DNA of 52,547 nucleotides, counting the filler, from Bipalium vagum (taxonomy: Eukaryota), in the NCBI GenBank assembly GCA_037834085.1. It is 3 parts of 3 records of this genome, joined end to end, with 100 filler letters (N's around TTAATTAATTAA, not from the genome) between each part and the next. Parts side by side here need not be neighbours in the genome. Positions count along the whole stretch, not along the records: positions 1 to 16,515 come from JBBMKC010107214.1; 2 more parts are not named here. One strand, given 5' to 3'. Position 1 is the first letter of the stretch. Every line of letters begins with the position of its first letter. Below are positions 488 through 42,100 of this stretch, piece after piece. The position numbers were made by a program, and so were the translations under genes. The notes under the pieces are model-generated. The model was not told the DNA's origin. It did not search any database and worked only from the letters and a program-made list of their open reading frames with translations.

Positions 488-2506
488 TGTTAATATTTTA
501 ATATTACTAATCAACAACAGCTATGCAATCATATAAACACAAGATGATAACTACAATAAAAAAATGAGTGTCTTAAGTTACACCACAAAATATCAAAGTT
601 CTCGTATGTTTAACAAAATCTTCACTGCTTCCAAAACTTTGTATCCCAATATCACCATCTGACATAAGAATGTCTCAAAATAGTGTCCAACTAATTTACA
701 ATAATAACTAAAGCCAAAATGAACTATAAAACAATAAACCAAGATAAAATCATAGGAGATAAACGAAAGTCACTTACTAATGTCATTATTCTATCTTATT
801 GTCTATTTCAGTCCATAAAGCTCTACAGTGACTCGGTACAATCCCTATCAAATGTGTGAAATCAATTTAATTTTAAAGTATCAGAATAACCGTACAGTTC
901 AAATTCAAAATTTTAAATATCAAATTCTTAAAATCTTTAATCAAATTTTCAAATATCTTTAAAGTCACGACTCCAATGATCTCACCGATGGATGATATCA
1001 GTCGAGCCAGTGACTTTTAGATGACCGCTGGGTCAGCATCATGGGGATCTACTTTAAACTTAGTTGTCGCTTATGAATCATGTGTTCTGGTCAAACCCCT
1101 CTTCTTAAATTTTTTGTTTATATTATAATAGTCAACGCGTATCCTGGATTTCCGTGCAGTTTAATTTTACATATCAGACCTTATTTTTCTTAGCTTGAGG
1201 TTGGTATTAAAAAAACCAAACTGATTCTTATCGGTCCGCATGTAGTACTTTGAACAGAACTCCTTGTAGACTTTATCCAGTTTAAAAGAGCTCTCAGTCG
1301 TGACAACTCTTCTTTCATAAAATATTTTTATAAAATTAGCGTAACGCTTTATGAAAGAGAATTATAACTTAGCCCTAAGAGGTTTTTTTAATTTATGGGC
1401 AAACGGGCTTCCCTGTCAAAATCTTTGTCAGGATGACGGTCATTTGATGGTCCTACCTGAAAAACTTTCTTGATCGAAGCTGTTGTTGCTTTTTTTCTTT
1501 CCTTTGACAGTCGTAATAAAAGCTTTGCAACTAATTTTAAAGAGAGTTTTAAAGGAGAACTTTGTTACTATTATACGGAAATGTAGCAACGTGTGCTCAT
1601 CGACTTGTGACTCCTCCCTTTGTGTACTTGTTGTGTTCGGAATCCCTACTCTTTCTCTTTCTATATAAAACACCCACCACTATACCATATCCGCTCCCTC
1701 AAAAATGAATTCGAAATAAAACTTTATTTATATCAACAATCACAAATATTAAATCAATCACAAATAAAATGTAAACTGAAATCCCTCTTTTATATTTAAT
1801 AATGATACTAATTTAATACTAAAATCAAAATATAACGAAAAATAAAATTATCAAAATTATCCTCACCGAGAGCAGCAAGGGGTCCTCAGGTCACCCTCTA
1901 GGCCCGTCTCAGGTTGCCTAGGGGCTCCCTAACTCGCGGGGTCCCCTTGTAGAAAAATCCGACTGCATAATTCTGGGCATAGACATAACAATTACTGGGG
2001 TCGTTTCTCTGGAATCTCTGGGCAGCGTCATCTGAATTTTTTTTTTGACAATCTTCTGAAATTTTTCTGGCAATCTTCCGAATTTTTTTTTCTTTTGACA
2101 ATCTTCTGAAATTTTTTCTTCAACAGAACTTTTTGGGACGACTTAACGGGAGTAGCCGTCTCCTTTTATATGCGTAGGGATTGGTCTACGATCACCAATC
2201 CCTACTCGGAGACGACTATTGTTTTTCACTATCTCCACGCCGAGATAGTCTCCTTACTCCCTGGGCTAATGGATTTCGTCAGGAAATCCATTAGCCTGAT
2301 CAAAAAATATAATCCCCACGGGGGGATTCTGTCATTAAGGAAATGACAAAAATTATTTTTCTTTTAAAAAAATTATTACTAAAAAAAATTATTATTATGA
2401 AAATTATTATTATTATTAATTAAAAATTATTGTTATTATTATTTAAAAATCCTTCTTATTATTATTACTAACTAGAAATCATTATTATTGCTCCAGAAAC
2501 CCAACA
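488..2506 (-). mobile_element. Putative solo LTR or non-autonomous LTR-like element (~2.0 kb)
   Basis: The minus strand begins TGTTGG (2506) and ends AACA (488), with ATATT direct repeats on both flanks (483-487, 2507-2511). It contains a TATA box, a hairpin cluster, a GC-rich stem also found upstream of the Gypsy gag at 42 kb, an AATAAA near 1725 and a decayed ORF. The TSD could be chance in AT-rich DNA. Confidence 0.5.
2148..2348 (-). promoter_or_regulatory. TATA box (TATAAAAGGAGA on minus, ~2159-2170) inside a cluster of five hairpins
   Basis: Perfect stems at 2174-2185/2194-2205 (12 bp), 2228-2235/2242-2249 (8 bp), 2264-2277/2283-2296 (14 bp), 2311-2317/2322-2328 (7 bp) and 2330-2336/2342-2348 (7 bp). 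The same 12-mer occurs at 25218-25229 (+). Confidence 0.55.
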
Positions 2507-2927
2507 ATATTAATATTAAAAATATTTGTAATACTCGATGGATTAATCGAAAGTTAACATTATAATCAATCTGATTCTTTTATACTAGTTGGTTTAACAA
2601 AAGAAACAATCATTTCAAACGACAAAAATTTGTTATTATCGAAATTCCTTTTCACAATCAAATAATATAATAAATATTCGCCATCGTAACACCAAAAAAT
2701 TAGAATAATAACCAATGGTCTATAATATTGATCAAATATTACTCAAATATTACTCAAATCAAATGCCAATCAATTATATCTATAGATTTTATTATTTTAT
2801 TAATTAGTAGATTTTAAAATGTATTTTCTGCTAAATCTTTAAGATTTAGGAAGGATTTAGAAAAGTAAAATAATAAAACTTTCAAAAATTAAAAAAATGT
2901 TGGCAATGATTTAATACTTCGTAGATA

Positions 2928-4398
2928 TAGTGATCGTCATAATTTTTCAAACACCACATAATTATTTACATTCATTTTTAATAATTTTACTTATATATAA
3001 TGTCAAGTTCAAGGGTAATGTACATTACTTCAAGATAATATATCTTTCACTATATTAGAAATATTAATTTTTAAATATTATAATAAGAATTTTGTTAAAG
3101 TTACATTTTAAATTAAAGCATAATTTTTCAAACAGTTAATTATTAAACATTTCCTAATATCTTATTAAACGTTATATAATTATTTGTTATTTTTGCATGA
3201 TATATGTTTTTTAAATTTTAGCAATTAAATGAAAAGTTTGGCGGAAAAATCTCAAGACTTGGCTTTAAAGGAAGATGGATTAAGTTACGCTGAAATAGGG
3301 AAAATTATGAAAATAACAAGAAACTCTTCAATTAGTTTATGCAGATATGTAAAGAAGAAACGTAATAAACGTGATTCAAAGTTTACAATAAGTAAACAAG
3401 AGAATTTAGGTTTGAAAAGAGTAATAGGCAAGTTAAAAGAGGAATATTAAGGTAAATTCAAATAATTTAAAAATTGAATATGATTTGAATATTTCTTTAT
3501 CGACTATTCAAAGGTACATGAGAAGAAGTGGAATGAGGTATATAAAAAAAATACAAAATCTGATTTATTTGAGTAAGAAATATAAGGAAACCCGATTGTT
3601 GAAAGTAAGTACGTGGGTTAGTAAAAATCATGTATGGGAAAAAATTGTTTTCACTGACGAAAAAAAATTTAGTCTGAATGGTCCGGATGATTGGCGAACA
3701 TATTTGTCGATAGCGCCTACAATGAAGTAGTGGCGACGTTATGGTTTGGATGATGACATTGCCCAGTGGCTTATTGTCTTACAATGTTATCAAAGGAAAA
3801 TTTAATTCAGCAGCATTTATAGAGTCATTAAAGACGAGTATTGTGCCATTTGAAAATTAATTTTGCCACAGGTTTTTGGCTACAAGAAGATATCTCCTGG
3901 TCACAAATCCGCCAAAGTCAAAGAATCTACGAAATCCAGTGAAATTAGGATTCCAGATTGGCCAGCTAAAAGTTCTGATCTGAACATTGCAGAAGACATT
4001 TGGAAATAGATTTCAGATCAGGTCTACGACGGTCCTCAATTTGAAAATATCAATGAATTAACTGCTAAACTGAAAAATGTAGCGAAAAATTATTAATTCC
4101 AAAGTACAAAAATCGCAAATTTGTTTACATCCTTCATAAGGTGTTTATGTATAGTTTTATTAAAAAGAGGTTTCTTTTGTAAAAAAAATAAAATGTTCGT
4201 AATAAATATTAAGTGGTTGAATTTACATTTTTTATTTTGTCATTTTATTTACACTACATAGCAAATATTGCATGGGAAACATGATATTTGCAGATTTCAA
4301 AACTCTTTCTATCATGCAGGCACAATTTGAAAAAATTAAACAACATAATACTTGTATAATACTAAATTATGTCCTGTTTGAAAAATCATGACGATCTG
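2928..4398 (+). mobile_element. Decayed Tc1-family (DD34E-type) transposon with TIRs
   Basis: TIRs gatcgtcataatttttcaaaca / tgtttgaaaaatcatgacgatc with TA flanks. The frameshifted transposase shows an HTH (GLSYAEIGKIMK), FTDEKKFSLNGPD and WPAKSSDLNIAEDIW. Confidence 0.9.
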
Positions 4399-4419
4399 TA
4401 TACTTATCCGATTTATACT

Positions 4420-6615: not shown

Positions 6616-8005
6616 ATGTCTAGTGATAGTGAAGCAGATGTTGAACTTAACAATTTAGAAGACGGCTCCATTCTGAACAAATATAAGATGGCAGCTGAAA
6701 TCGTCCAAAGTTTTTGACTTCTTTATTTGATATATTTTATCTAATTTTTTCAATAGAAATTTTGAAAGAAATAATTGCAAAGTGTGAACCAAAGGCTAGC
6801 ATTTTTGAATTGTGTTCTTTTGGTGATCAGAGATTAAATGAAGAAATTTCGGGAGTTTTCAAGAAAGAAAAAGAAATGAAAAAAGGAATTTCATATCCTA
6901 CAACCATTTGCAAAAACAATCTAGTTGCAAACTTCTCTCCAGAGCAATCCACCGAAACATTGGAAAATGATGATTTGGTTAAAATGTAATAGTCTATTTT
7001 TTAATAGACTTATCTAATAATTTAAAAAATAAAGTGATTTAGGTGTGTACATTGATGGATACGCTGCAATTGTCGGACATACATTCGTTATCGGATCGTC
7101 AAAGGATAACAAAGTCACCGGACGTAAAGCAGATGTAATATTGGCTGCTTATAATGCTGCCGAGGCTGCCTTAAGATTAATCAAACCTGGACGAAACGTA
7201 ATTATTTGATCTGTAATAACTCTATTAATCTTAATTCTTCTAGAGCAAAGCCATATCTGAACCTCTTTGCCAAACCGCCACAGATTTTAACTGTAAAATT
7301 TTAGAAAGTAATCGATATTTTAAAATTATTTTAAACTTCCTATTGATTCTTTGTTATTAAAGACTGCATCGTTTATGGAATGGAAAAGAACATTTATGAC
7401 AACAAGAACACATTTAGCATCAATCCATCGGACGATTTGAAGAAAAGCGCTGAAAAAGTCGAGTTTGATATCAACCAGGTCTACGTCATGGACGTTGTCG
7501 TGACAACAGGCGATGGAAAGATCAAGGAGAAAGAAATCAAGACAACGATGTATAAGCGAGAGCTGACCTCGACCTACCAACTGAAAATGAAGGCTTCGAG
7601 ACGTAAGTAACTTTGACTTTAGGGAGACTTACAATTATCAATTTTATATATTAAATCCATTTATCTACTAATTGTTCAGAGTTCTACAGCGATGTCTGCA
7701 ACAAATCTCTTGGTTACCCGTTCACGATCCGCTCGTTCGCCGATACGACCAAAGCTAAGATCGGCGTCAAGGAGTGCGTCACTCACGGTCTCGTGCAACC
7801 GTTGCCAGTGATGTTCGAGAAGAGTGGCGAATTCTTGGCCCACTTCAAATTCACCGTACTGTTGACCGCGAACGGACCAATGAAGCTGACCGGCCTCGCT
7901 TTTGATTCGAGCATTTACCAATCGACACACAAAGTACAAAACCAGGCCATTAAAACACTTTTATCAGAGCCCGTCAAGAACAAAAAGAAGGCAGAAGCCA
8001 GTTAG
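6616..8005 (+). CDS. PA2G4: Proliferation-associated protein 2G4 (EBP1, inactive MetAP2-fold ribosome-associated factor); exons 6616-6709, 6757-6985, 7035-7197, 7244-7307, 7363-7602, 7680-8005
   Basis: The spliced ORF is 1116 nt with consistent intron phases. Motifs: [75 protein letters not shown]. Confidence 0.96.
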
Positions 8006-10959: not shown

Positions 10960-11660
10960 AGGAGATGATCTCAACGATTTAAACATTGAAATGTAAATCT
11001 GAAAGATGACCAACACGGACGACTTCCTCAGAGGATAGATGATGATGATTAAAAGAAATCATTGAAGCAGTTTCTCGACAAACTACTTGAGAACATGATA
11101 AGGTAGAATCTTGTTTCAGTTATTGCCGAAGAGGAAAAATGTCTTCGAGAAAAGAAACTAACTTTGGAAGAATTAAAATAAAAAAGAAAAGAATTTTCCA
11201 ACCGATCTGTAAGCTTTTCAACAATGTTTTTGTAATAGGATTATGTATAGGGTTTCATGGAGTTATAGATTCCATAGGCCCGGAAGATCCGGGGATCCAA
11301 TGATCTCTCCGGCGAGTATATTATTTATTGTTCAATTTGTTTTTTTCTTATTGCTTATAAAAAGTAATTCCACACTTTATTTTTTATTGATCATTGATTC
11401 TTAACATTAATTATTCTTCATATTTTTGTCTTCAGACATTGATTGTGATTTTGTGTTTCAGGAATTACTTTATTGTGATTTAAAGAAATTGAATCTTTGT
11501 TTATTACGATTGTTTTTTGTTCCTTTTGGTGAAAATAAAGATTATTGTAATTATTTTGATTCATTTAGTAAGGTTTATTGTGATCAATTTGATTTATACA
11601 GTACAGCGTACTTGGTTATTTTGATTCTCGAACACAGTAATAGCTATTTAAGGGGTCACA
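10960..11660 (+). mobile_element. LTR-like relic carrying the conserved GC-rich stem (11232-11316)
   Basis: gtaataggatt...gatccggggatccaatgatctctccggcgag resembles the minus-strand copies at 41944-42060 and 21287-21375. A purine-rich stretch precedes it and a T/G-rich stretch follows. Boundaries are approximate. Confidence 0.45.
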
Positions 11661-12899
11661 GAAACAGCGAGCATTAAGTTATATTTTGAGTATAATATTA
11701 AAAATATCTAGTAAACTAACAGCTTTTCCCTTGCAGATCAATTCCCTTTTAAATAAAGTTATAACTTCACAATAATTCCTTAACTACAGTCACGATTAAT
11801 TGAGAACTACTGATTCCCATAGGATAATATTAGTTTTGTCACTTGAAAATTATTTCATTTCTTAAGAATTCCAGAGATTTATAAATTATATTAGAAAAAT
11901 CTAATTTTTGTCTTAGAATTTTGAGTATTAGTATTATCCATTGAAAATTGACACTTGTTTAGTCACAAAAATCAAGAGTACTAAAAGAAATGCTGAAAAT
12001 GGTAATAAAAAGATATTTTTGTGATTAAAACCATTTTTCCTGGGAAATTTTAATGATTTTTTGAATTATAAAATATATTTATGGAAATTATATTTAAAAT
12101 AATTGATAGACAAAGGGTGCAACATTGATCCAGAAATCTGATCAAAGATAGACTATAAGTATCAATACGATTCAGAACTATTACTACTTATAATCAGCGA
12201 TAATTTTTTAATTTCCGATACCTAAAAATCATTATAAAAACTTAAATAAGAATGTAAATCAAATTTTAACTTTTATAGGGAATCTGACTATAACCTATGT
12301 GTAAAAATTTAATGAAAAACTGACATCTGTCAAGAAAACCGATAACAGATCAATCCATTGAATGTTCTAATGAAATTCGTACTGTTCTTTAAATTCCCTC
12401 TAAGGTAAAGGTCATTTAATCAGCTTTTATTACCAAATGAAAAAATATATTATTTATTATCTTTTAGTGAACGGAGTTCCGTACTTGAGAAAGAAAAAAA
12501 TCAATAAAATCATGACAAAATCAGAAATAACATTAGCAAAAAAATCAATAAACATTTATAAATGTTTATACAAATAAAGCTAGTGACTTATTCATTGTAT
12601 TGCAGTATAATTTATTATTTGAAAAAATAAAATAATAAAATTAATTGTTAAAGACAGTAAAAAGTTCACATAATTCTATTTTGGAAAATATAAAAAATTT
12701 AAAACATTGACACGGTCTTTCACTTTAGCGAACAAGATTGAAGAATGAAATAAAAATAAATAATAAAATCAAAATTTAATATTTCTTAAATTAATTATTT
12801 TAAGCGGAATTTTACATCATAGAACACACATTCGCAAACCCCTATTGATAGGCTTTGGGATATTTTCATCTCGAAACTTTTCTTTTATTTTTAAAAAAT

Positions 12900-14453: not shown

Positions 14454-16066
14454 TTAGGTATGGTAATTAGTTCTTATAGATTAATTATTATCATAAATAT
14501 CATGTGTTATTGAAAATAAAACTAAAAGTGGTATTGTAATAGATCTATAAGATATCAATAGTTAGTACAGTGCAACTTCTATTTTGAACCACAAAATTTC
14601 AAAAATAGAAGTTGGTCCAATATTAGAAGTTAAGATATAAAAAGGCTATAAAACATGTTTTATATGAACTTATATGGATGTAATAATAGAAATTTAAAAA
14701 ACAACAATAAATCCAATAAATAATAATATATTTCAACGTTTTTGAATTAAATAATCCGTAATTTTAGCTTTTAATTCATGCTCTTCGTATATCAATTATG
14801 AAAATGTTATATAACAAAATATTATTAAAACAAATTATTGAAATTTTTGGACCAAGAATTTTATTCTTTATATGAAAATATCGGGAAATATAATAAGTAC
14901 AAATTATTTGTCCAAATATGGAGTTTGGTCCGATTTAAGAAAGTGGTCCATTTCAGAAATTGGTCCAAAATAGAAGTTGCACTGTATTTGTTTTAACTGA
15001 TTAAATAGCTTATTTATTTTAGCGAAAATTCAAAATCATAGACCAAGAAAACAACTTTTGAGGGAATCATTATTATTTTGCTACGATGTAAAGAAATCAG
15101 CAGCCGAAGCCCATAGATTAATGCAAAAAGCTTACGGTGAATATATACTCATCTGAACCAACATGCCGAGAATGGTATCGACGATTTAAGGCAGGTGACT
15201 TTAACGTCGAAGACAAAGAACGTTCAGGACAATCAAAGAAGTTCGAAGATGATGATTTACGAGGAATTATCAAAGAACATCAATGCCGAACGCTTGAAGA
15301 AACCACACAGACATTGAATGTTGACAAGTCAACTGCTGATAAACGGATGTACGCATTGAGAATGATCCAAAAGTATAGAAAATGGATACCACATGATTTG
15401 ACCAAAATACAGCAAGAAAATCGGAAAACTGTTTCTGAAATGGTTATGACAAGGCACTCATTTTTACCTCGAATTATAACTGATGATAAAAAATGGTTGT
15501 GGTACAGAAAATCATGGACATCATCGGAGAACCATCAAAATCGACTGTAGAAAGATGGACAAGCAAAAGTAAAGAGATGCTATGTATCTGGTGGGACCAA
15601 TGTGGAGTATTGTAACAGCAGAAATTACTCGATTTAAGTCGAAAAATAAGTACCAAGAGACCACAATATGGCCTAAGACATGATTGGATCATTTTGTATA
15701 ACGCCAGACTACATTTTGCAAAACCAGTTAAAGAAACATTGGAATGACTTGATTAGGAGGTTCTACTTCACCTAATGTACTCACCAGACATAGCAACATC
15801 TGACTTCCAATTGTTTCGATCCATGTAGTATTCTCTTGCTGGACAGGCCTTCAATTCCAATGAATATGTCAAAAATTGGGTGGATTAATGGATTGCTTCA
15901 AAAAATCAAGATTTCTTTTACCGCGGAATCCATTCTTTACCAAAAAGATTGTCAAAAGTTGTACCTGTCAACGGAAAATATTTTAACTGAAATAAATGTT
16001 TTGTTACTTTTAAATAAATGACTTTATTTTCATAAGAAAACGATGGCAGTTAATTTCCATACCTAA
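14454..16066 (+). mobile_element. Decayed mariner (Mos1-like) with TIRs, interrupted by a MITE
   Basis: TIRs ttaggtatggtaatta / taatttccatacctaa with TA flanks. Transposase pieces: WYRRFKAGDFNVEDKERSG, WIPHDL, IITDDKKW, MLCIWWDQ, YSPDIATSDFQLF. Confidence 0.9.
14568..14984. mobile_element. 417-bp MITE with pogo/Tigger-type ends
   Basis: 24-bp TIRs cagtgcaacttctattttgaacca / tggtccaaaatagaagttgcactg (23/24 match), TA on both sides, subterminal tggtcc repeats and no ORF. Confidence 0.9.
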
Positions 16067-21286: not shown

Positions 21287-21375
21287 CTCACCCGGAGCGA
21301 TCAATGATTCCCTGGGTCCAATGTAAGGTCGACTATAGATTCCAAATATTCACTGAATCCACTGGAAATCCTGTT
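21287..21375 (-). repeat. Isolated copy of the conserved GC-rich stem motif
   Basis: Minus strand aacaggatttc-cagtggattc...gacccagg-gaatcattg-atcgctccgggtgag has the same layout as the copies at 1.9, 11.3 and 42 kb. Confidence 0.6.
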
Positions 21376-25179: not shown

Positions 25180-25890
25180 AAACTTGTCTACGACTGATTA
25201 GTCGTCAACTAGAATAGTATAAAAGGAGAAGGATTTCTCCATATTTTCGCCCTCAACTAGATCAGAAGAAAAAGTAGTGGTAATCTTATTATTGAAGTTT
25301 ATTTCTAAAAAATATTTATTACTGAAGAGAAGTTAATTTCTGAAAGAAGATTTTGTTTTATTGAAGCCTAGTAGTAGAAAGAAGCAGATAGATTGAAAAA
25401 TATCATGATTAAAAAAAAACCCTTATTGCCATTCTGAGAATCATTTTATTGTTAATCAAGTACGTTGGTATACTGACATTGGTCCTGGGATTGTGCTTAA
25501 GTTCCCACCAGAGGGATATCTCCAAGCAACTGTAAAGGCTCAGCTGATAATTCGGGAAGCTTGAACGTATATAACCCGTAGGCTCATTTTATTTTTCTTT
25601 TAACATTTTTTATATTAATTATTATTCAAGTTTGATTGTCGATTTCATTAACTTTAAGTATTTATTTTGTTTTAATTAACTGATTCGATTTTATCGAACT
25701 TTTTGTGCTTGATTGATTACCTAAGATAATTTCAGACATTATTGTGATCCCCTTTTGTTAAGTTTGACACTTTGTGAAATTGTTATCAGTTTGATTTATT
25801 GCGATATAAATACAAGTTATTGCCTTACTGATTGTTGTTTTTTTGCACCACCTAAGAGTTTGAGTCAGGTTTAAAGTTTGATACAATAAA
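25180..25890 (+). mobile_element. Divergent LTR-like module (TATA box, hairpins, GC-rich stem, T/G-rich tail)
   Basis: TATAAAAGGAGA at 25218; hairpins 25190-25205 and 25225-25240; stem ttaagttccc/gggaagcttga (~25507-25564); gatataaatacaagtt (~25803) resembles gatataaataaagtt in the 0.5-2.5 kb element. Confidence 0.45.
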
Positions 25891-39199: not shown

Positions 39200-42100
39200 G
39201 TGAAATAAAATTTCGATAGAAGTTCGTATATCTTTAAAATTAACATTAATTTCTGATCTCTTTTTGCTTTAAGCAATTCTGTTGCTGTCTTGAATCTTTT
39301 TCCTGATGGAATTAAATCTTTAAATAAAACGTCTAATGCACATTTTCACTCCTCTTCTCTCGAAGTTTCCACTCTTACCATTGCAGGCTAAGTAAAAATT
39401 ACTTCTGCATATCAATTGCTCCCATATCCTCAGATATTATTGTCTCCACCATTAAAAGATCCACTGGTAATCCAATATTCAATGTAACACAAGGCCCCGA
39501 TCACATCCCTTCTGACCGAGGCTGATACTCTCTTTCATAATCTTCCTCATAATTGTCTTCAATATTTACCTTATTCTGGTCTGTGTCATGAATACGCATA
39601 TAAACACGATGGAAAGTGCAAATCCCAATCCGTTTGTTGTTTATTGGTGTACGATGACAGCATATTGAGTAGAGTCCCGCTGAATCTTTCGACTAACCCG
39701 TCTGTTTGCGGTCCATACGGTGACGTATTGAGCTTCAAAATTTCAAATAACACGCATATCTCATTTATCAATTACCTCATAAAGTTAATTCCCTTATCTG
39801 CCAATAGTTTCCTTTGTGCGCCATACCTAAAAATGATTTCCTCAACAAAGATTTTGGCTATGGTCTCTGTTTTTTGATCCTTCATTGGATAAGCTCTGGT
39901 CACTTAGTAAAGTAATCACATGAAACAACCTTAATCTCTAAATCTCTCTAAAACCGTTGGAGTAACTGTTAATTCTGTCACTTGATTCAAGAGATCAATG
40001 ATTTTGTCTTTGTCTCGTAGTGCTCTAGTGATTTTTTTTCCAAAGCTTCAGGAATTCGTCCTGGATCTTCTTGGTCTATATCCACCAATACCACAATAAC
40101 ATTGCCGTTTGTATCCACTTTTTCTTCCAAAGAATCATTCCTTGATAATACTCTGATTTCATTGTCCTGCGATCTGATCATGATTAGTGTTTCGTAACCA
40201 GTTACTCTAGCCAATTATCTTCTGAGTTTATCATTTTCTATTCTCAACCTTACCCTTTCATCTTCATCCTTTATATCTCATAAAGCATTATCTTTTGTAT
40301 TTCCAAATGCCAATCTTTTTACAATTGTTTGCATTTTAAAAATTGAGCTTTTCCATTGATATTTACATTGTCCCTCTGAGGTGGAATTTTCGTCCAATAT
40401 ATCTCTTCGAAGTTGTCTTTCTTATTACAGTGTCTAAAGACCCTTATTTTGCATACTCGGACAAAATGTTCAACCTCGTGTCAATTTCTACAAACTACAT
40501 CTGACAATATCTTTTGATCTCTATCTCGGACCAAACTGGAATCTCTCTTCGGTGCTTTACATTGCCTTGCCAAATGTCCCGTTCTTTGACAATTATAACA
40601 CTTCTTTGGTACCTGTTCTCGATTATCACTGTTATTTTCCGTGTTTCTTGTCCTGCTATTCTCTCTACGATTAGCTCCAAGTTCACAAATAATCGGCGGG
40701 TTTCCTTTAATATTCATCTCTGGTGGTTTCGCTTTTTGTAACAATTTATTCATATCTCCATTCTCAGCAGATACAATAATCCTATGAAAAATTGATCCTC
40801 CACAATTTTCTATATTGTTTCTCTCCATTGATCCTTTTGTCCAAAAGCTCTCTGGACTAACAATTCAATTTGATAAGCATATTCTCCCACCGTCCCACAT
40901 GTCTTCTGTTTTCTCTGTTGAAACATTTGCCTGTACACCCTGCTGATTTCTCCCGGTATCAACTTCTTTGTCAAATCGGTAACCACTTCGGCCTAACCAT
41001 AATTATTTACATTTATATCATAATTGGCTTTCTGTACCATCCCACTCAAATGAATCGCTAATCTCCTCACCATCCGACCCTTATCATATCCCAATGCTTC
41101 GGACTTGTCTGTATTCGGCCGTAAAATCCGCGAACTCCGTTGGCTCTCCACTAAGCACTCTAACAGACAATTTCACTATATCATAATCCATAACTTATAA
41201 TCTTTTCACTTCCTTTACAATATTTTATAAGGATACTCATTGACTAATTTCACTAGAATCTGAATTTCTTTCGAATTTCCTACTTCTAATTGACTACTCA
41301 CTGATTTCACTGAACCTCTGATTACTTTCTTTTGGAAATCACTTGCTGCTCCCTTCTGTTGACCTGAATTAGATTTTCTTCTTCTGTCAGAATAAAACTT
41401 GAAACATCGCCGGGCTTTACAAGAAGTTCTCAAAAACCAAGTCAAATTCAAAAAAAATAAAATAAACAATTTTATGCCACACAAAACTTACAAAAATCAA
41501 AAATTACTCAAGTTTTATCAATATCAATAATCAAAATCACAACACTCTAAATTTAAATTCCCTCACAAATCAATAATTCCTTAGTACACAATTTTGTGTT
41601 CGTTCACTATTATCGCTACACAAATTTGCCTTTATTAAATGAAAACTCTCACAATAATACTGTATTCGCACCCTAAAATTGAATCAAAACGAATCAAAAC
41701 AACAGCCTGACATATTTGTCGTAACAGGAAATTCGTCTCAATGCCTGATGATCACACAAAACAAAAACAAAATAATCCAAATGTCGAATAACAAAAATTA
41801 AACTAAGTTTCAATCAACTTGCTAAAAGATAATCAAAATCAAACACAAAAATAAATAATAATGACATGATTATATAATTTTAAGATAAATGTCAGATGGT
41901 CACATAAAAAAGTGAAGTTAAAAGGAAACAAAATATAACGATATCATCGAGAGCCACAAGGGATCCCCGGGTCGTCCTCTAGGTCCTTTGCAGATCACCT
42001 AAGGATTCCCAAACTCGAATGGCCCCTTGGTAAATCCTATTGCATTGTCATTAGCATAACCACGGAAAGAATGATAATTACTGAAAGCGAATTATCCTCG

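What the first reader, a model, noticed from the sequence alone, without database searches (positions are those of the whole stretch)
1862..1985. Dispersed GC-rich stem motif with compensatory changes: candidate undescribed structured RNA element of an LTR-like family
Seen in sequence: four clear copies (1862-1985 minus, 11232-11316 plus, 21287-21375 minus, 41944-42060 minus) and one divergent copy (~25495-25585 plus). They share the layout GGATT(T) - long irregular stem - CTC(T/C)-containing linker - GG(T/C)GAG-like end - T-rich tract. The closing helix differs in sequence but still pairs: caagggg/ccccttg; caagggg/tcccttg; gggtttc/gggatcc; cagtg-attc/gaat-cattg; ttaag-ttccc/gggaa-cttga. The inner helix covaries between the 1.9 kb copy (taggC...Gccta) and the 42 kb copy (taggT...Accta). 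Inference: selection on RNA structure, for example a packaging, dimerisation or export signal, a structure presenting a major splice donor, or an unrecognised ribozyme. One copy lies in the leader upstream of a Gypsy gag.
Basis: partly seen in the sequence, partly recalled or inferred. Interest (0 to 1): 0.8.

Follow-up and report, generated by a model that had tools for sequence, protein, structure and literature searches.

The report
Conserved RNA stem-loop inside retrotransposon LTRs
The GC-rich motif is not a free-standing element but the best-conserved part of the long terminal repeat of a very abundant retrotransposon group, and it keeps the same RNA stem-loop through compensating base changes, so it is probably an undescribed control signal of the element's own RNA.

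Summary
Both copies in this piece are real: 1850-1963 (minus strand) and 11232-11328 (plus strand). Neither is a free-standing element. Copy 1 lies inside a 944-bp solo LTR (2506 to 1563, minus strand). The LTR has TG..CA ends, and a CCAAT palindrome and TATA box about 200 nt upstream of the motif. AATAAA lies about 120 nt downstream. Copy 2 is a decayed copy with a 17-nt deletion, in an older, related LTR.

A covariance model gave 150 of 150 scored genome hits at E below 1e-15. The first look gave about 60,000 rough candidates. Full elements carry a primer binding site right after the LTR (290 junctions against 0 in the control).

Between LTR lineages the motif is the most conserved island. 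A structure-blind alignment of 13 lineages folds into the same four-helix stem-loop. Eleven of its 24 pairs show compensatory double changes. Three structure pairs rank 1, 2 and 4 among 6007 column pairs.

Rfam, ARAGORN and coding-frame tests are negative. A conserved GTGAG, which looks like a 5' splice site, follows the stem.

My best reading is a new R-region cis-acting RNA element of a Ty3/Gypsy-like LTR retrotransposon group. Its function is inferred only, because no RNA data exist.

The parts
1563..2506 (-). Solo LTR (944 bp) of the young, abundant family, running TGTTGGG...TAGTAACA. This copy has no matching target-site duplication.
   Evidence: Sharp repeat boundaries at 1561-1563 and about 2506-2526 in 29 genomic copies at 78-93% identity. 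4-bp duplications are seen in L008 (CTAG) and L015 (CTTG).
2174..2205 (-). 11-nt perfect palindrome GTAGGGATTGG / CCAATCCCTAC holding a CCAAT box, just upstream of the TATA box. Inferred U3 promoter.
   Evidence: Read directly from the sequence. The region 180-240 nt upstream of the motif is the second conserved island between lineages.
2163..2170 (-). TATA box TATAAAAG. The inferred transcription start is about 25-30 nt downstream.
   Evidence: Sequence. A TATA box lies 174-243 nt upstream of the motif in six lineages.
2037..2116 (-). Three 22-28-nt tandem repeats (TTCAGAAGATTGTCAAAA-like) between the inferred start site and the motif.
   Evidence: the repeat finder family D2.
1850..1963 (-). 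The 113-position motif as modelled (covariance model R1), including the GGATT start, the stem-loop, the linker and GTGAG.
   Evidence: 110.5 bits, E 1.2e-27. Alignments A2, A3 and A4.
1940..1949 (-). P1, 5' strand (CAAGGGGACC).
   Evidence: Pairs with 1876-1885 in the minimum-free-energy fold and in the de novo consensus fold.
1876..1885 (-). P1, 3' strand (GGACCCCTTG).
   Evidence: Pair 18-86 is U-A, G-C or C-G in different lineages.
1927..1931 (-). P2, 5' strand.
   Evidence: Consensus fold columns 33-37 with 74-79.
1886..1890 (-). P2, 3' strand.
1916..1924 (-). P3, 5' strand (CCCCTAGGC).
   Evidence: Five of its pairs show double changes.
1894..1903 (-). P3, 3' strand (GCCTAGAGGG, with one bulged A).
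1904..1915 (-). Apical part: conserved GACC...GG with a 2-bp P4 (CC/GG) and a variable 5-6-nt loop.
   Evidence: Column conservation weighted by lineage. Consensus fold.
1862..1866 (-). GTGAG, preceded by CTCTCG. It resembles a 5' splice site or U1-binding site and lies 9 nt after P1.
   Evidence: Kept as GTGAG or GTAAG in most lineages. Lineage-weighted conservation is 0.65-0.96 per base. Its use is untested.
1723..1728 (-). AATAAA, the inferred polyadenylation signal marking the end of R.
   Evidence: Sequence. AATAAA lies 95-235 nt downstream of the motif in most lineages.
11185..11705 (+). Remnant of an older, related LTR (R-U5 part). Its tail can be aligned with the tail of the young LTR.
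   Evidence: Genome hits at 68-87% identity covering 11185-11705. Tail similarity read directly.
11232..11328 (+). Copy 2 of the motif. It is decayed: a 17-nt deletion removed the P3 3' strand and the apex, and GTGAG has mutated to GCGAG.
   Evidence: 71.1 bits, E 2.1e-16. Alignment A2. Its fold differs.

Best explanation
The motif is a cis-acting structured RNA element carried in the R region of the LTRs of a very abundant, probably Ty3/Gypsy-like, LTR retrotransposon group of this AT-rich animal genome. In the genomic RNA it would be present near both ends.

It folds into an irregular stem-loop of about 75 nt. A 9-11-bp closing helix (P1) leads to an asymmetric internal loop, then a short GGG/CCC helix (P2), then a 9-bp helix with one bulge (P3), and then a GACC...GG apex (P4). 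Several unpaired adenines are invariant.

Nine to ten nucleotides after the stem sits a conserved GUGAG, and AAUAAA follows 100-230 nt later.

The mechanism I commit to is inferred, not shown. GUGAG is a U1 snRNP site, possibly also the splice donor for a subgenomic RNA. It would keep the poly(A) signal of the 5' LTR silent. The adjacent stem-loop would set how accessible that site is, or would bind a factor, so that the 5' and 3' copies of R behave differently. This is what has been shown for foamy viruses.

My odds by step:
- It is part of an LTR: about 0.95.
- The stem-loop is under selection as RNA: about 0.75.
- It lies in R: about 0.6.
- The U1/poly(A)/splice mechanism specifically: about 0.3.
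For: LTR identity:
- Sharp repeat boundaries and TG..CA ends.
- 4-bp target duplications in L008 and L015.
- The LTR-end plus primer-binding-site junction occurs 290 times, against 0 in the reversed control.
- An Integrase_H2C2 hit lies 6.2 kb downstream, on the same strand, of one such junction on contig C15724.

Position in the LTR:
- CCAAT and TATA lie about 200 nt upstream and AATAAA 95-235 nt downstream in several lineages.

Selection:
- The motif is the most conserved island between LTR lineages. Collinear BLAST cover is 0.38-0.55 over the motif, against 0.2 or less elsewhere except about 0.29 at the LTR end.

Structure:
- RNAalifold on a structure-blind MAFFT alignment of 13 lineages predicts P1 to P4, and 11 of the 24 pairs show double changes.
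- 89.7% of cells are paired. There are 21 double-change cells, against 6.8 +/- 2.2 in shuffles (0 of 500 reach the observed value) and 3-7 when the partners are slid.
- In a scan of all 6007 column pairs, structure pairs rank 1, 2 and 4. The hypergeometric P for three of the top five is 5.6e-7.
- The L088/L013 lineage has five of nine P3 pairs replaced, and all of them still pair. It is 74% identical in context to another lineage.
- Seven lineages give the same architecture when each is folded alone.

GUGAG:
- It is kept as GTGAG or GTAAG across lineages.

Analogy:
- In foamy viruses the major splice donor lies upstream of the poly(A) signal in R. [quoted passage not shown]
Against: - No RNA data exist. 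The start site, poly(A) site, splicing and even transcription are therefore all inferred.
- Single-sequence folding z-scores are modest, from -0.7 to -2.6.
- RNAalifold predicts nothing when decayed copies are included.
- The RNAalifold covariation term is small, at -1.15 kcal/mol.
- There is no covariation within the young family.
- I chose the 13 lineage representatives among well-scoring model hits, which favours paired cells.
- G-U versus A-C counts do not clearly mark the strand.
- GTGAG is no more conserved than many other motif columns.
- All lineages come from one genome.
- The Ty3/Gypsy link rests on a single co-location.
Confidence: 0.5

Rival explanations
1. The stem-loop is a real RNA or cDNA structure, but it serves reverse transcription or particle assembly. 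It could promote minus-strand strong-stop transfer between the two R copies, or act in dimerisation or packaging by Gag. Under this reading the neighbouring GUGAG is incidental.
For: The structure evidence is the same as for the best explanation. The motif lies in the repeated R region. From established knowledge, R hairpins such as HIV-1 TAR and the poly(A) hairpin take part in strand transfer and RNA regulation (see PMC2645353, listed). Residual conservation in long R regions has been linked to stem-loops (PMC3601003).
Against: The apical loops are not palindromic (UGAGAC, GUUCA, GGAUU, UGAAAA), so no kissing-loop dimer site is apparent. Packaging signals usually lie after the primer binding site, so that only unspliced RNA carries them. 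GUGAG conservation is left unexplained.
Confidence: 0.25
2. There is no RNA function. The block is conserved as DNA, for example as a downstream promoter, enhancer or insulator element of the LTR. Alternatively it looks conserved only because the lineages are related, and the apparent compensations are chance plus my selection of well-pairing copies.
For: RNAalifold finds no consensus structure when decayed copies are included. Folding z-scores are weak. There is no G-U over A-C excess overall. The model-based alignment A3 is biased towards the structure. All data come from a single genome.
Against: The structure-blind alignment gives the same helices. Slid-partner controls that keep relatedness give 3-7 double-change cells against 21 observed. 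Structure pairs rank 1, 2 and 4 of 6007 column pairs. P3 is fully re-written yet still pairs in one lineage. A protein-binding DNA site would conserve sequence rather than complementarity.
Confidence: 0.15
3. The block is a captured small-RNA gene or SINE module in the LTR, with a Pol III promoter as in Cassandra, Helenus and Ajax. Alternatively it is a self-cleaving ribozyme.
For: Small-RNA-derived sequences in LTRs are known (PMC10886601). In copy 1 the T-rich tract after the motif could be read as a Pol III terminator.
Against: No Rfam family, including tRNA, 5S, snRNAs and all ribozyme families, reaches E of 10 on the window or E of 1 on six diverse copies. ARAGORN finds no tRNA. The TTTT run is not conserved in the older lineages. 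No ribozyme core motif is conserved.
Confidence: 0.05

Closest known systems
Foamy virus R region: major splice donor upstream of the poly(A) signal, regulated by U1 snRNP and RNA structure (Schrom et al. 2013, PMC3694450)
   Same: A 5'-splice-site-like sequence lies inside the repeated R region, upstream of AAUAAA and next to a stable RNA structure. Both are present in the 5' and 3' copies of R.
   Different: The host element is an invertebrate LTR retrotransposon, not a vertebrate retrovirus, and there is no sequence similarity. Here nothing has been shown experimentally: not U1 binding, not splicing, not the poly(A) site. The distances also differ.
Retroviral R-region hairpins (HIV-1 TAR and poly(A) hairpins, PMC2645353; the remark that long R regions keep conservation through stem-loops, PMC3601003)
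   Same: A conserved stem-loop in R that is maintained by complementarity rather than by sequence, and that is the best conserved LTR module apart from the promoter and the termini.
   Different: The shape is different, an irregular four-helix stem of about 75 nt. There is no Tat-like partner known, and the poly(A) signal is not inside the hairpin. It is not in Rfam.
Cassandra, Helenus and Ajax: LTRs carrying 5S rRNA- or tRNA-derived modules (Kojima 2024, PMC10886601)
   Same: A compact, GC-rich, structured, RNA-like block embedded in an LTR and spread through the genome with it.
   Different: There is no similarity to any small RNA (Rfam and ARAGORN are negative). The LTR is long (944 bp) and has a Pol II-type CCAAT/TATA promoter. 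The element is not a miniature TRIM.

Membership tests
LTR of an LTR retrotransposon | Terminal TG...CA with short inverted ends and sharp repeat boundaries | tested here: met
   TGTTGGG...TAGTAACA. The boundaries are shared by 29 copies.
LTR of an LTR retrotransposon | Short target-site duplication flanking the insertion | tested here: inconclusive
   4-bp duplications in L008 (CTAG) and L015 (CTTG). There is none in the window copy or in L023.
LTR of an LTR retrotransposon | Primer binding site two bases after the 3' end of the 5' LTR in full elements | tested here: met
   The pattern GTAACAnnTGGTGAGCCCGACG gives 290 matches against 0 in the control. It is seen in L006 and L016. From memory it resembles a tRNA-Trp site, but a pattern for such a tRNA gene found nothing.
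Ty3/Gypsy superfamily | Internal gag-pol in the order PR-RT-RH-IN between two LTRs | tested here: inconclusive
   There is only one co-location: Integrase_H2C2 lies 6.2 kb downstream of an LTR/PBS junction on C15724.
R-region structured RNA element of a retroelement | Lies between the transcription start and the poly(A) site | tested here: inconclusive
   Inferred from TATA 174-243 nt upstream and AATAAA 95-235 nt downstream. There is no RNA evidence.
R-region structured RNA element of a retroelement | Secondary structure maintained by compensatory change | tested here: met
   Caveats: one genome, selected lineages, and no R-scape.
Functional 5' splice site / U1 site | GU with consensus flanks, and observed exon junctions | not testable with these tools
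   The sequence G|GUGAG(G/A) fits the consensus. No RNA run is available.
Any Rfam family (including ribozymes, tRNA, 5S, snRNA) | Covariance-model match | tested here: not met
   No match over the motif at E up to 10 (window) or up to 1 (six diverse loci). ARAGORN finds none.
TRIMp3 (Cassandra/Helenus/Ajax) | Small-RNA-derived Pol III promoter module in a short LTR | tested here: not met
   No small-RNA similarity. The LTR is 944 bp with CCAAT/TATA.

The most novel reading that the evidence does not exclude
The stem-loop and its adjacent GUGAG form a conformational switch. It exposes a U1 snRNP site in the 5' copy of R, silencing the nearby poly(A) signal and perhaps donating a splice. It hides that site in the 3' copy. 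This would be the foamy-virus solution to the two-LTR poly(A) problem, found independently in an invertebrate Ty3/Gypsy-like retrotransposon group and defined by a new RNA family.
Probability: 0.2. Interest if true: 0.6.

Novelty: new member of a known kind. Interest (0 to 1): 0.42.

Why it matters
Conserved RNA structures are well studied in the R regions of vertebrate retroviruses. As far as my literature searches reached, they are hardly described for invertebrate LTR retrotransposons.

Here one compact stem-loop is the best conserved part of an LTR group that fills a sizeable share of a 440-Mb genome. It could therefore define a new Rfam-type family and help annotate and classify these LTRs.

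It also gives a concrete, testable handle on how such elements avoid premature polyadenylation in the 5' LTR, or how they control splicing, export or packaging.

It is not a new kind of biology. It is a new example whose function is still open.

Tried and rejected
- Within-family covariation: 27 copies of the young family gave none (covariation term -0.02). Dead copies decay independently, so this test is uninformative.
- RNAalifold on a mixed alignment with decayed copies: no structure.
- Pseudoknot between the internal loop (columns 29-32) and the linker (92-95): no better than shuffled or slid controls. Rejected.
- Strand test by G-U versus A-C counts: inconclusive.
- Rfam at permissive thresholds and ARAGORN: nothing on the motif.
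- Coding frame: stops in all six frames in most lineages and no 3-periodicity.
No gag-pol ORF lies in the loci I hold.
- A tRNA-Trp-like gene matching the primer binding site: pattern search found none.
- Cross-species copies: two exact-pattern scans of metagenome contigs found nothing.
- In notebook entry 1 I jotted by eye a majority string for the roughly 100-nt non-coding motif. I did not use it further. I built no consensus of an LTR, gene or element.

Full report
**What is at the coordinates**

On the minus strand, 1985-1862 reads GGATTTTTCTA, then CAAGGGGACC, an irregular GC-rich interior, GGACCCCTTG, CTGCTCTCG, GTGAGG, and then an AT-rich tract. The second copy in my piece (11232-11316, plus strand) has the same order of parts. 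The surrounding genome has about 20-36% GC in most 500-bp windows, so both blocks stand out.

**It is part of an LTR, not a free-standing element**

- A 500-bp probe around copy 1 found 1495 first-look candidates in the organism's own 440-Mb assembly. Forty-four matches were reported, from 40 scored candidates.
- BLAST of the window against 29 of these loci shows a repeat with sharp ends at 1561-1563 and about 2506-2526, and nothing shared outside it.
- In element orientation the repeat starts TGTTGGGTTTCT and ends ATAATAGTAACA. Two copies with both flanks have 4-bp target duplications: L008 (CTAG) and L015 (CTTG). The window copy and L023 do not.
- In L006 and L016 the LTR end is followed after two bases by TGGTGAGCCCGACGTGAT, a primer binding site.
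- The junction pattern GTAACAnnTGGTGAGCCCGACG occurs 290 times in the genome and 0 times in the reversed control. Many hits belong to a sister family whose LTR ends TTAACA.
- From memory this site resembles the tRNA-Trp site of avian retroviruses. A pattern for a matching tRNA gene found nothing, so that identity is unconfirmed.
- One Integrase_H2C2 hit lies 6.2 kb downstream, on the same strand, of such a junction on contig C15724. This is a weak pointer to Ty3/Gypsy.
The loci I hold contain no gag-pol ORF.

**Where in the LTR**

- Upstream of the motif lie a perfect 11-nt palindrome with a CCAAT box (2205-2174) and TATAAAAG (2170-2163).
- Downstream lies AATAAA (1728-1723).
- The LTR ends at 1563.
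- In the better preserved lineages a TATA box lies 174-243 nt upstream of the motif. AATAAA lies 95-235 nt downstream, and the LTR end about 280-380 nt downstream.
- The motif therefore most likely sits in R, about 150-270 nt into the transcript. That would place it near both ends of the genomic RNA. This is inference from sequence signals only.

**Copy 2**

- The block at 11185-11705 matches many old copies at 68-87% identity.
- Its tail can be aligned with the tail of the young LTR.
- Copy 2 is thus the same module in an older relative.
- It has lost 17 nt (the P3 3' strand and the apex), and its GTGAG reads GCGAG. Its own best fold is different. It is a relic, not a working second example.

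**Abundance**

- A covariance model built from 27 copies (R1) gave about 60,000 rough first-look candidates. All 150 scored places had E below 1e-15.
- In the 16.5-kb window it finds only the two copies.

**Is the structure real?**

- Within the young family there is no covariation. This is expected, because inserted copies decay independently.
- A mixed alignment with many decayed copies gives no consensus fold.
- The informative comparison is between lineages. The 70 copies in my loci fall into 28 clusters at 15% distance.
- I took 13 lineage representatives and aligned them with MAFFT, without any structure input. RNAalifold then predicts:
  - P1: columns 15-24 with 80-89
  - P2: columns 33-37 with 74-79
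  - P3: columns 40-48 with 61-70
  - P4: columns 51-52 with 59-60
- Eleven of these 24 pairs show a change on both sides that keeps the pair.
- On that alignment 89.7% of cells pair. There are 21 double-change cells, against 6.8 +/- 2.2 in shuffles (0 of 500 reach the observed value) and 3-7 when partners are slid by 1-3 columns, a control that keeps relatedness.
- In my own scan of all 6007 column pairs, structure pairs rank 1 (18-86), 2 (46-63) and 4 (40-70). All 24 structure pairs lie in the top 17%. Three of the top five being structure pairs has hypergeometric P of 5.6e-7.
- Pair 18-86 is U-A in six lineages, G-C in four and C-G in two. Pair 46-63 is G-C, A-U (in two unrelated lineages) or C-G.
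- The L088/L013 lineage has P3 as TTTCTGAG(T/C) with GCTCAGCAAA, instead of TCCATAGGC with GCCTAGCGGA. Five of nine pairs are replaced and all of them still pair.
- The model E-values for these two copies were marginal (6.7e-4 and 5.5e-3). However, L088 is 74% identical to the L089 lineage over 177 positions, including P1 and the downstream flank. I therefore accept it as homologous.
- Seven lineages folded alone give the same architecture, with modest z-scores from -1.2 to -2.6.
- A pseudoknot that I suspected between the internal loop and the linker is not supported.

**Selection**

In collinear BLAST comparisons of 10 lineage representatives (420 nt on either side), the motif is covered in 38-55% of pairs. 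Elsewhere cover is 20% or less, apart from about 29% at the LTR end. A smaller peak lies over the CCAAT/TATA region. The motif is the best conserved LTR module. No reading frame is open across it, and the differences show no 3-periodicity.

**What it is not**

- No Rfam family matches the motif at E up to 10 on the window, or up to 1 on six diverse loci.
- ARAGORN finds no tRNA.
- This excludes a captured small RNA of the Cassandra, Helenus or Ajax kind (PMC10886601) and every described ribozyme class.
- The TTTT run after copy 1 is not conserved in older lineages.

**How it most likely works**

- Shown: LTR membership, conservation, and complementarity kept through change.
- Inferred: the position in R.
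- Conserved single-stranded features are A38, A50 and A88 (numbering of alignment A3), the GACC...GG apex, and GTGAG (or GTAAG) 9-10 nt after P1.
- The arrangement is a stable structure, then a site resembling a 5' splice site, then AAUAAA 100-230 nt further on, all inside R. This is the arrangement of foamy viruses. There, U1 snRNP at the major splice donor suppresses the 5' LTR poly(A) site, and an alternative RNA structure blocks U1 at the 3' LTR (PMC3694450).
- I take this as the most likely mechanism, at about 0.3.
- Roles in strand transfer, packaging or export come next. The apical loops are not palindromic, which speaks against a kissing-loop dimer site.
- None of this could be tested. 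The only public run holding the sequence is not on record as RNA. I did not send those places to any search tool afterwards.

**Comparison and novelty**

Conservation of long R regions through stem-loops is an established idea for retroviruses (PMC3601003; PMC2645353, listed). This is a new, undescribed member of that kind in an invertebrate LTR retrotransposon group, not a new kind of system.

**Caveats**

- All lineages come from one genome.
- I chose the representatives among good model hits.
- R-scape was not available.
- The alignment tools print consensus lines on their own, and in notebook entry 1 I jotted a majority string for the short non-coding motif. I built and used no consensus of an LTR, gene or element.

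Noticed in passing
L016:1009-1510 and L061-L071 (for example L066:3-950, minus strand): A second high-copy repeat (2242 first-look candidates) encodes one ORF with a weak parvovirus-type phospholipase A2-like domain (PF08398, E 4e-4, below cut-off) followed by an rve integrase core (E 7e-13). This is an unusual domain pair. In L016 the repeat sits in the leader of the LTR element.
   Followed up: partly
L006:908-1665: After the primer binding site the element has a leader of more than 750 nt without any ORF. It carries repeated GACCTGTGTGG(C/T)A-like motifs.
   Followed up: no
window 2926-4402: 38-nt inverted repeats (87% complementary) at 2926-2963 and 4365-4402 flank ORF fragments (3229-3730) that by eye look like the helix-turn-helix start of a Tc1-type transposase. 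The Pfam scan gave nothing significant.
   Followed up: partly
window 15137-15550: A 137-aa ORF with a weak match to the Mos1 transposase HTH_48 domain (E 9e-4, below cut-off). It is probably a mariner remnant.
   Followed up: partly
window 14566-14591 and 14961-14986: A 26-nt inverted repeat, 96% complementary, with arms 369 nt apart. It looks like a miniature inverted-repeat element.
   Followed up: no
window 6714-8005: Short plus-strand ORFs in the most GC-rich part of the window (44.8% at 7501-8000). By eye and from memory they resemble exons of a PA2G4/EBP1-like host gene. Pfam was negative on the two fragments I tried.
   Followed up: partly
window 2174-2205 (minus strand): A perfect 11-nt palindrome GTAGGGATTGG / CCAATCCCTAC lies immediately upstream of the LTR TATA box. 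It gives a CCAAT box in both orientations.
   Followed up: no
window 2037-2116: Three tandem 22-28-nt repeats lie in the LTR between the inferred start site and the motif. Similar CAGAAGA-rich repeats lie upstream of the motif in the older lineages.
   Followed up: no
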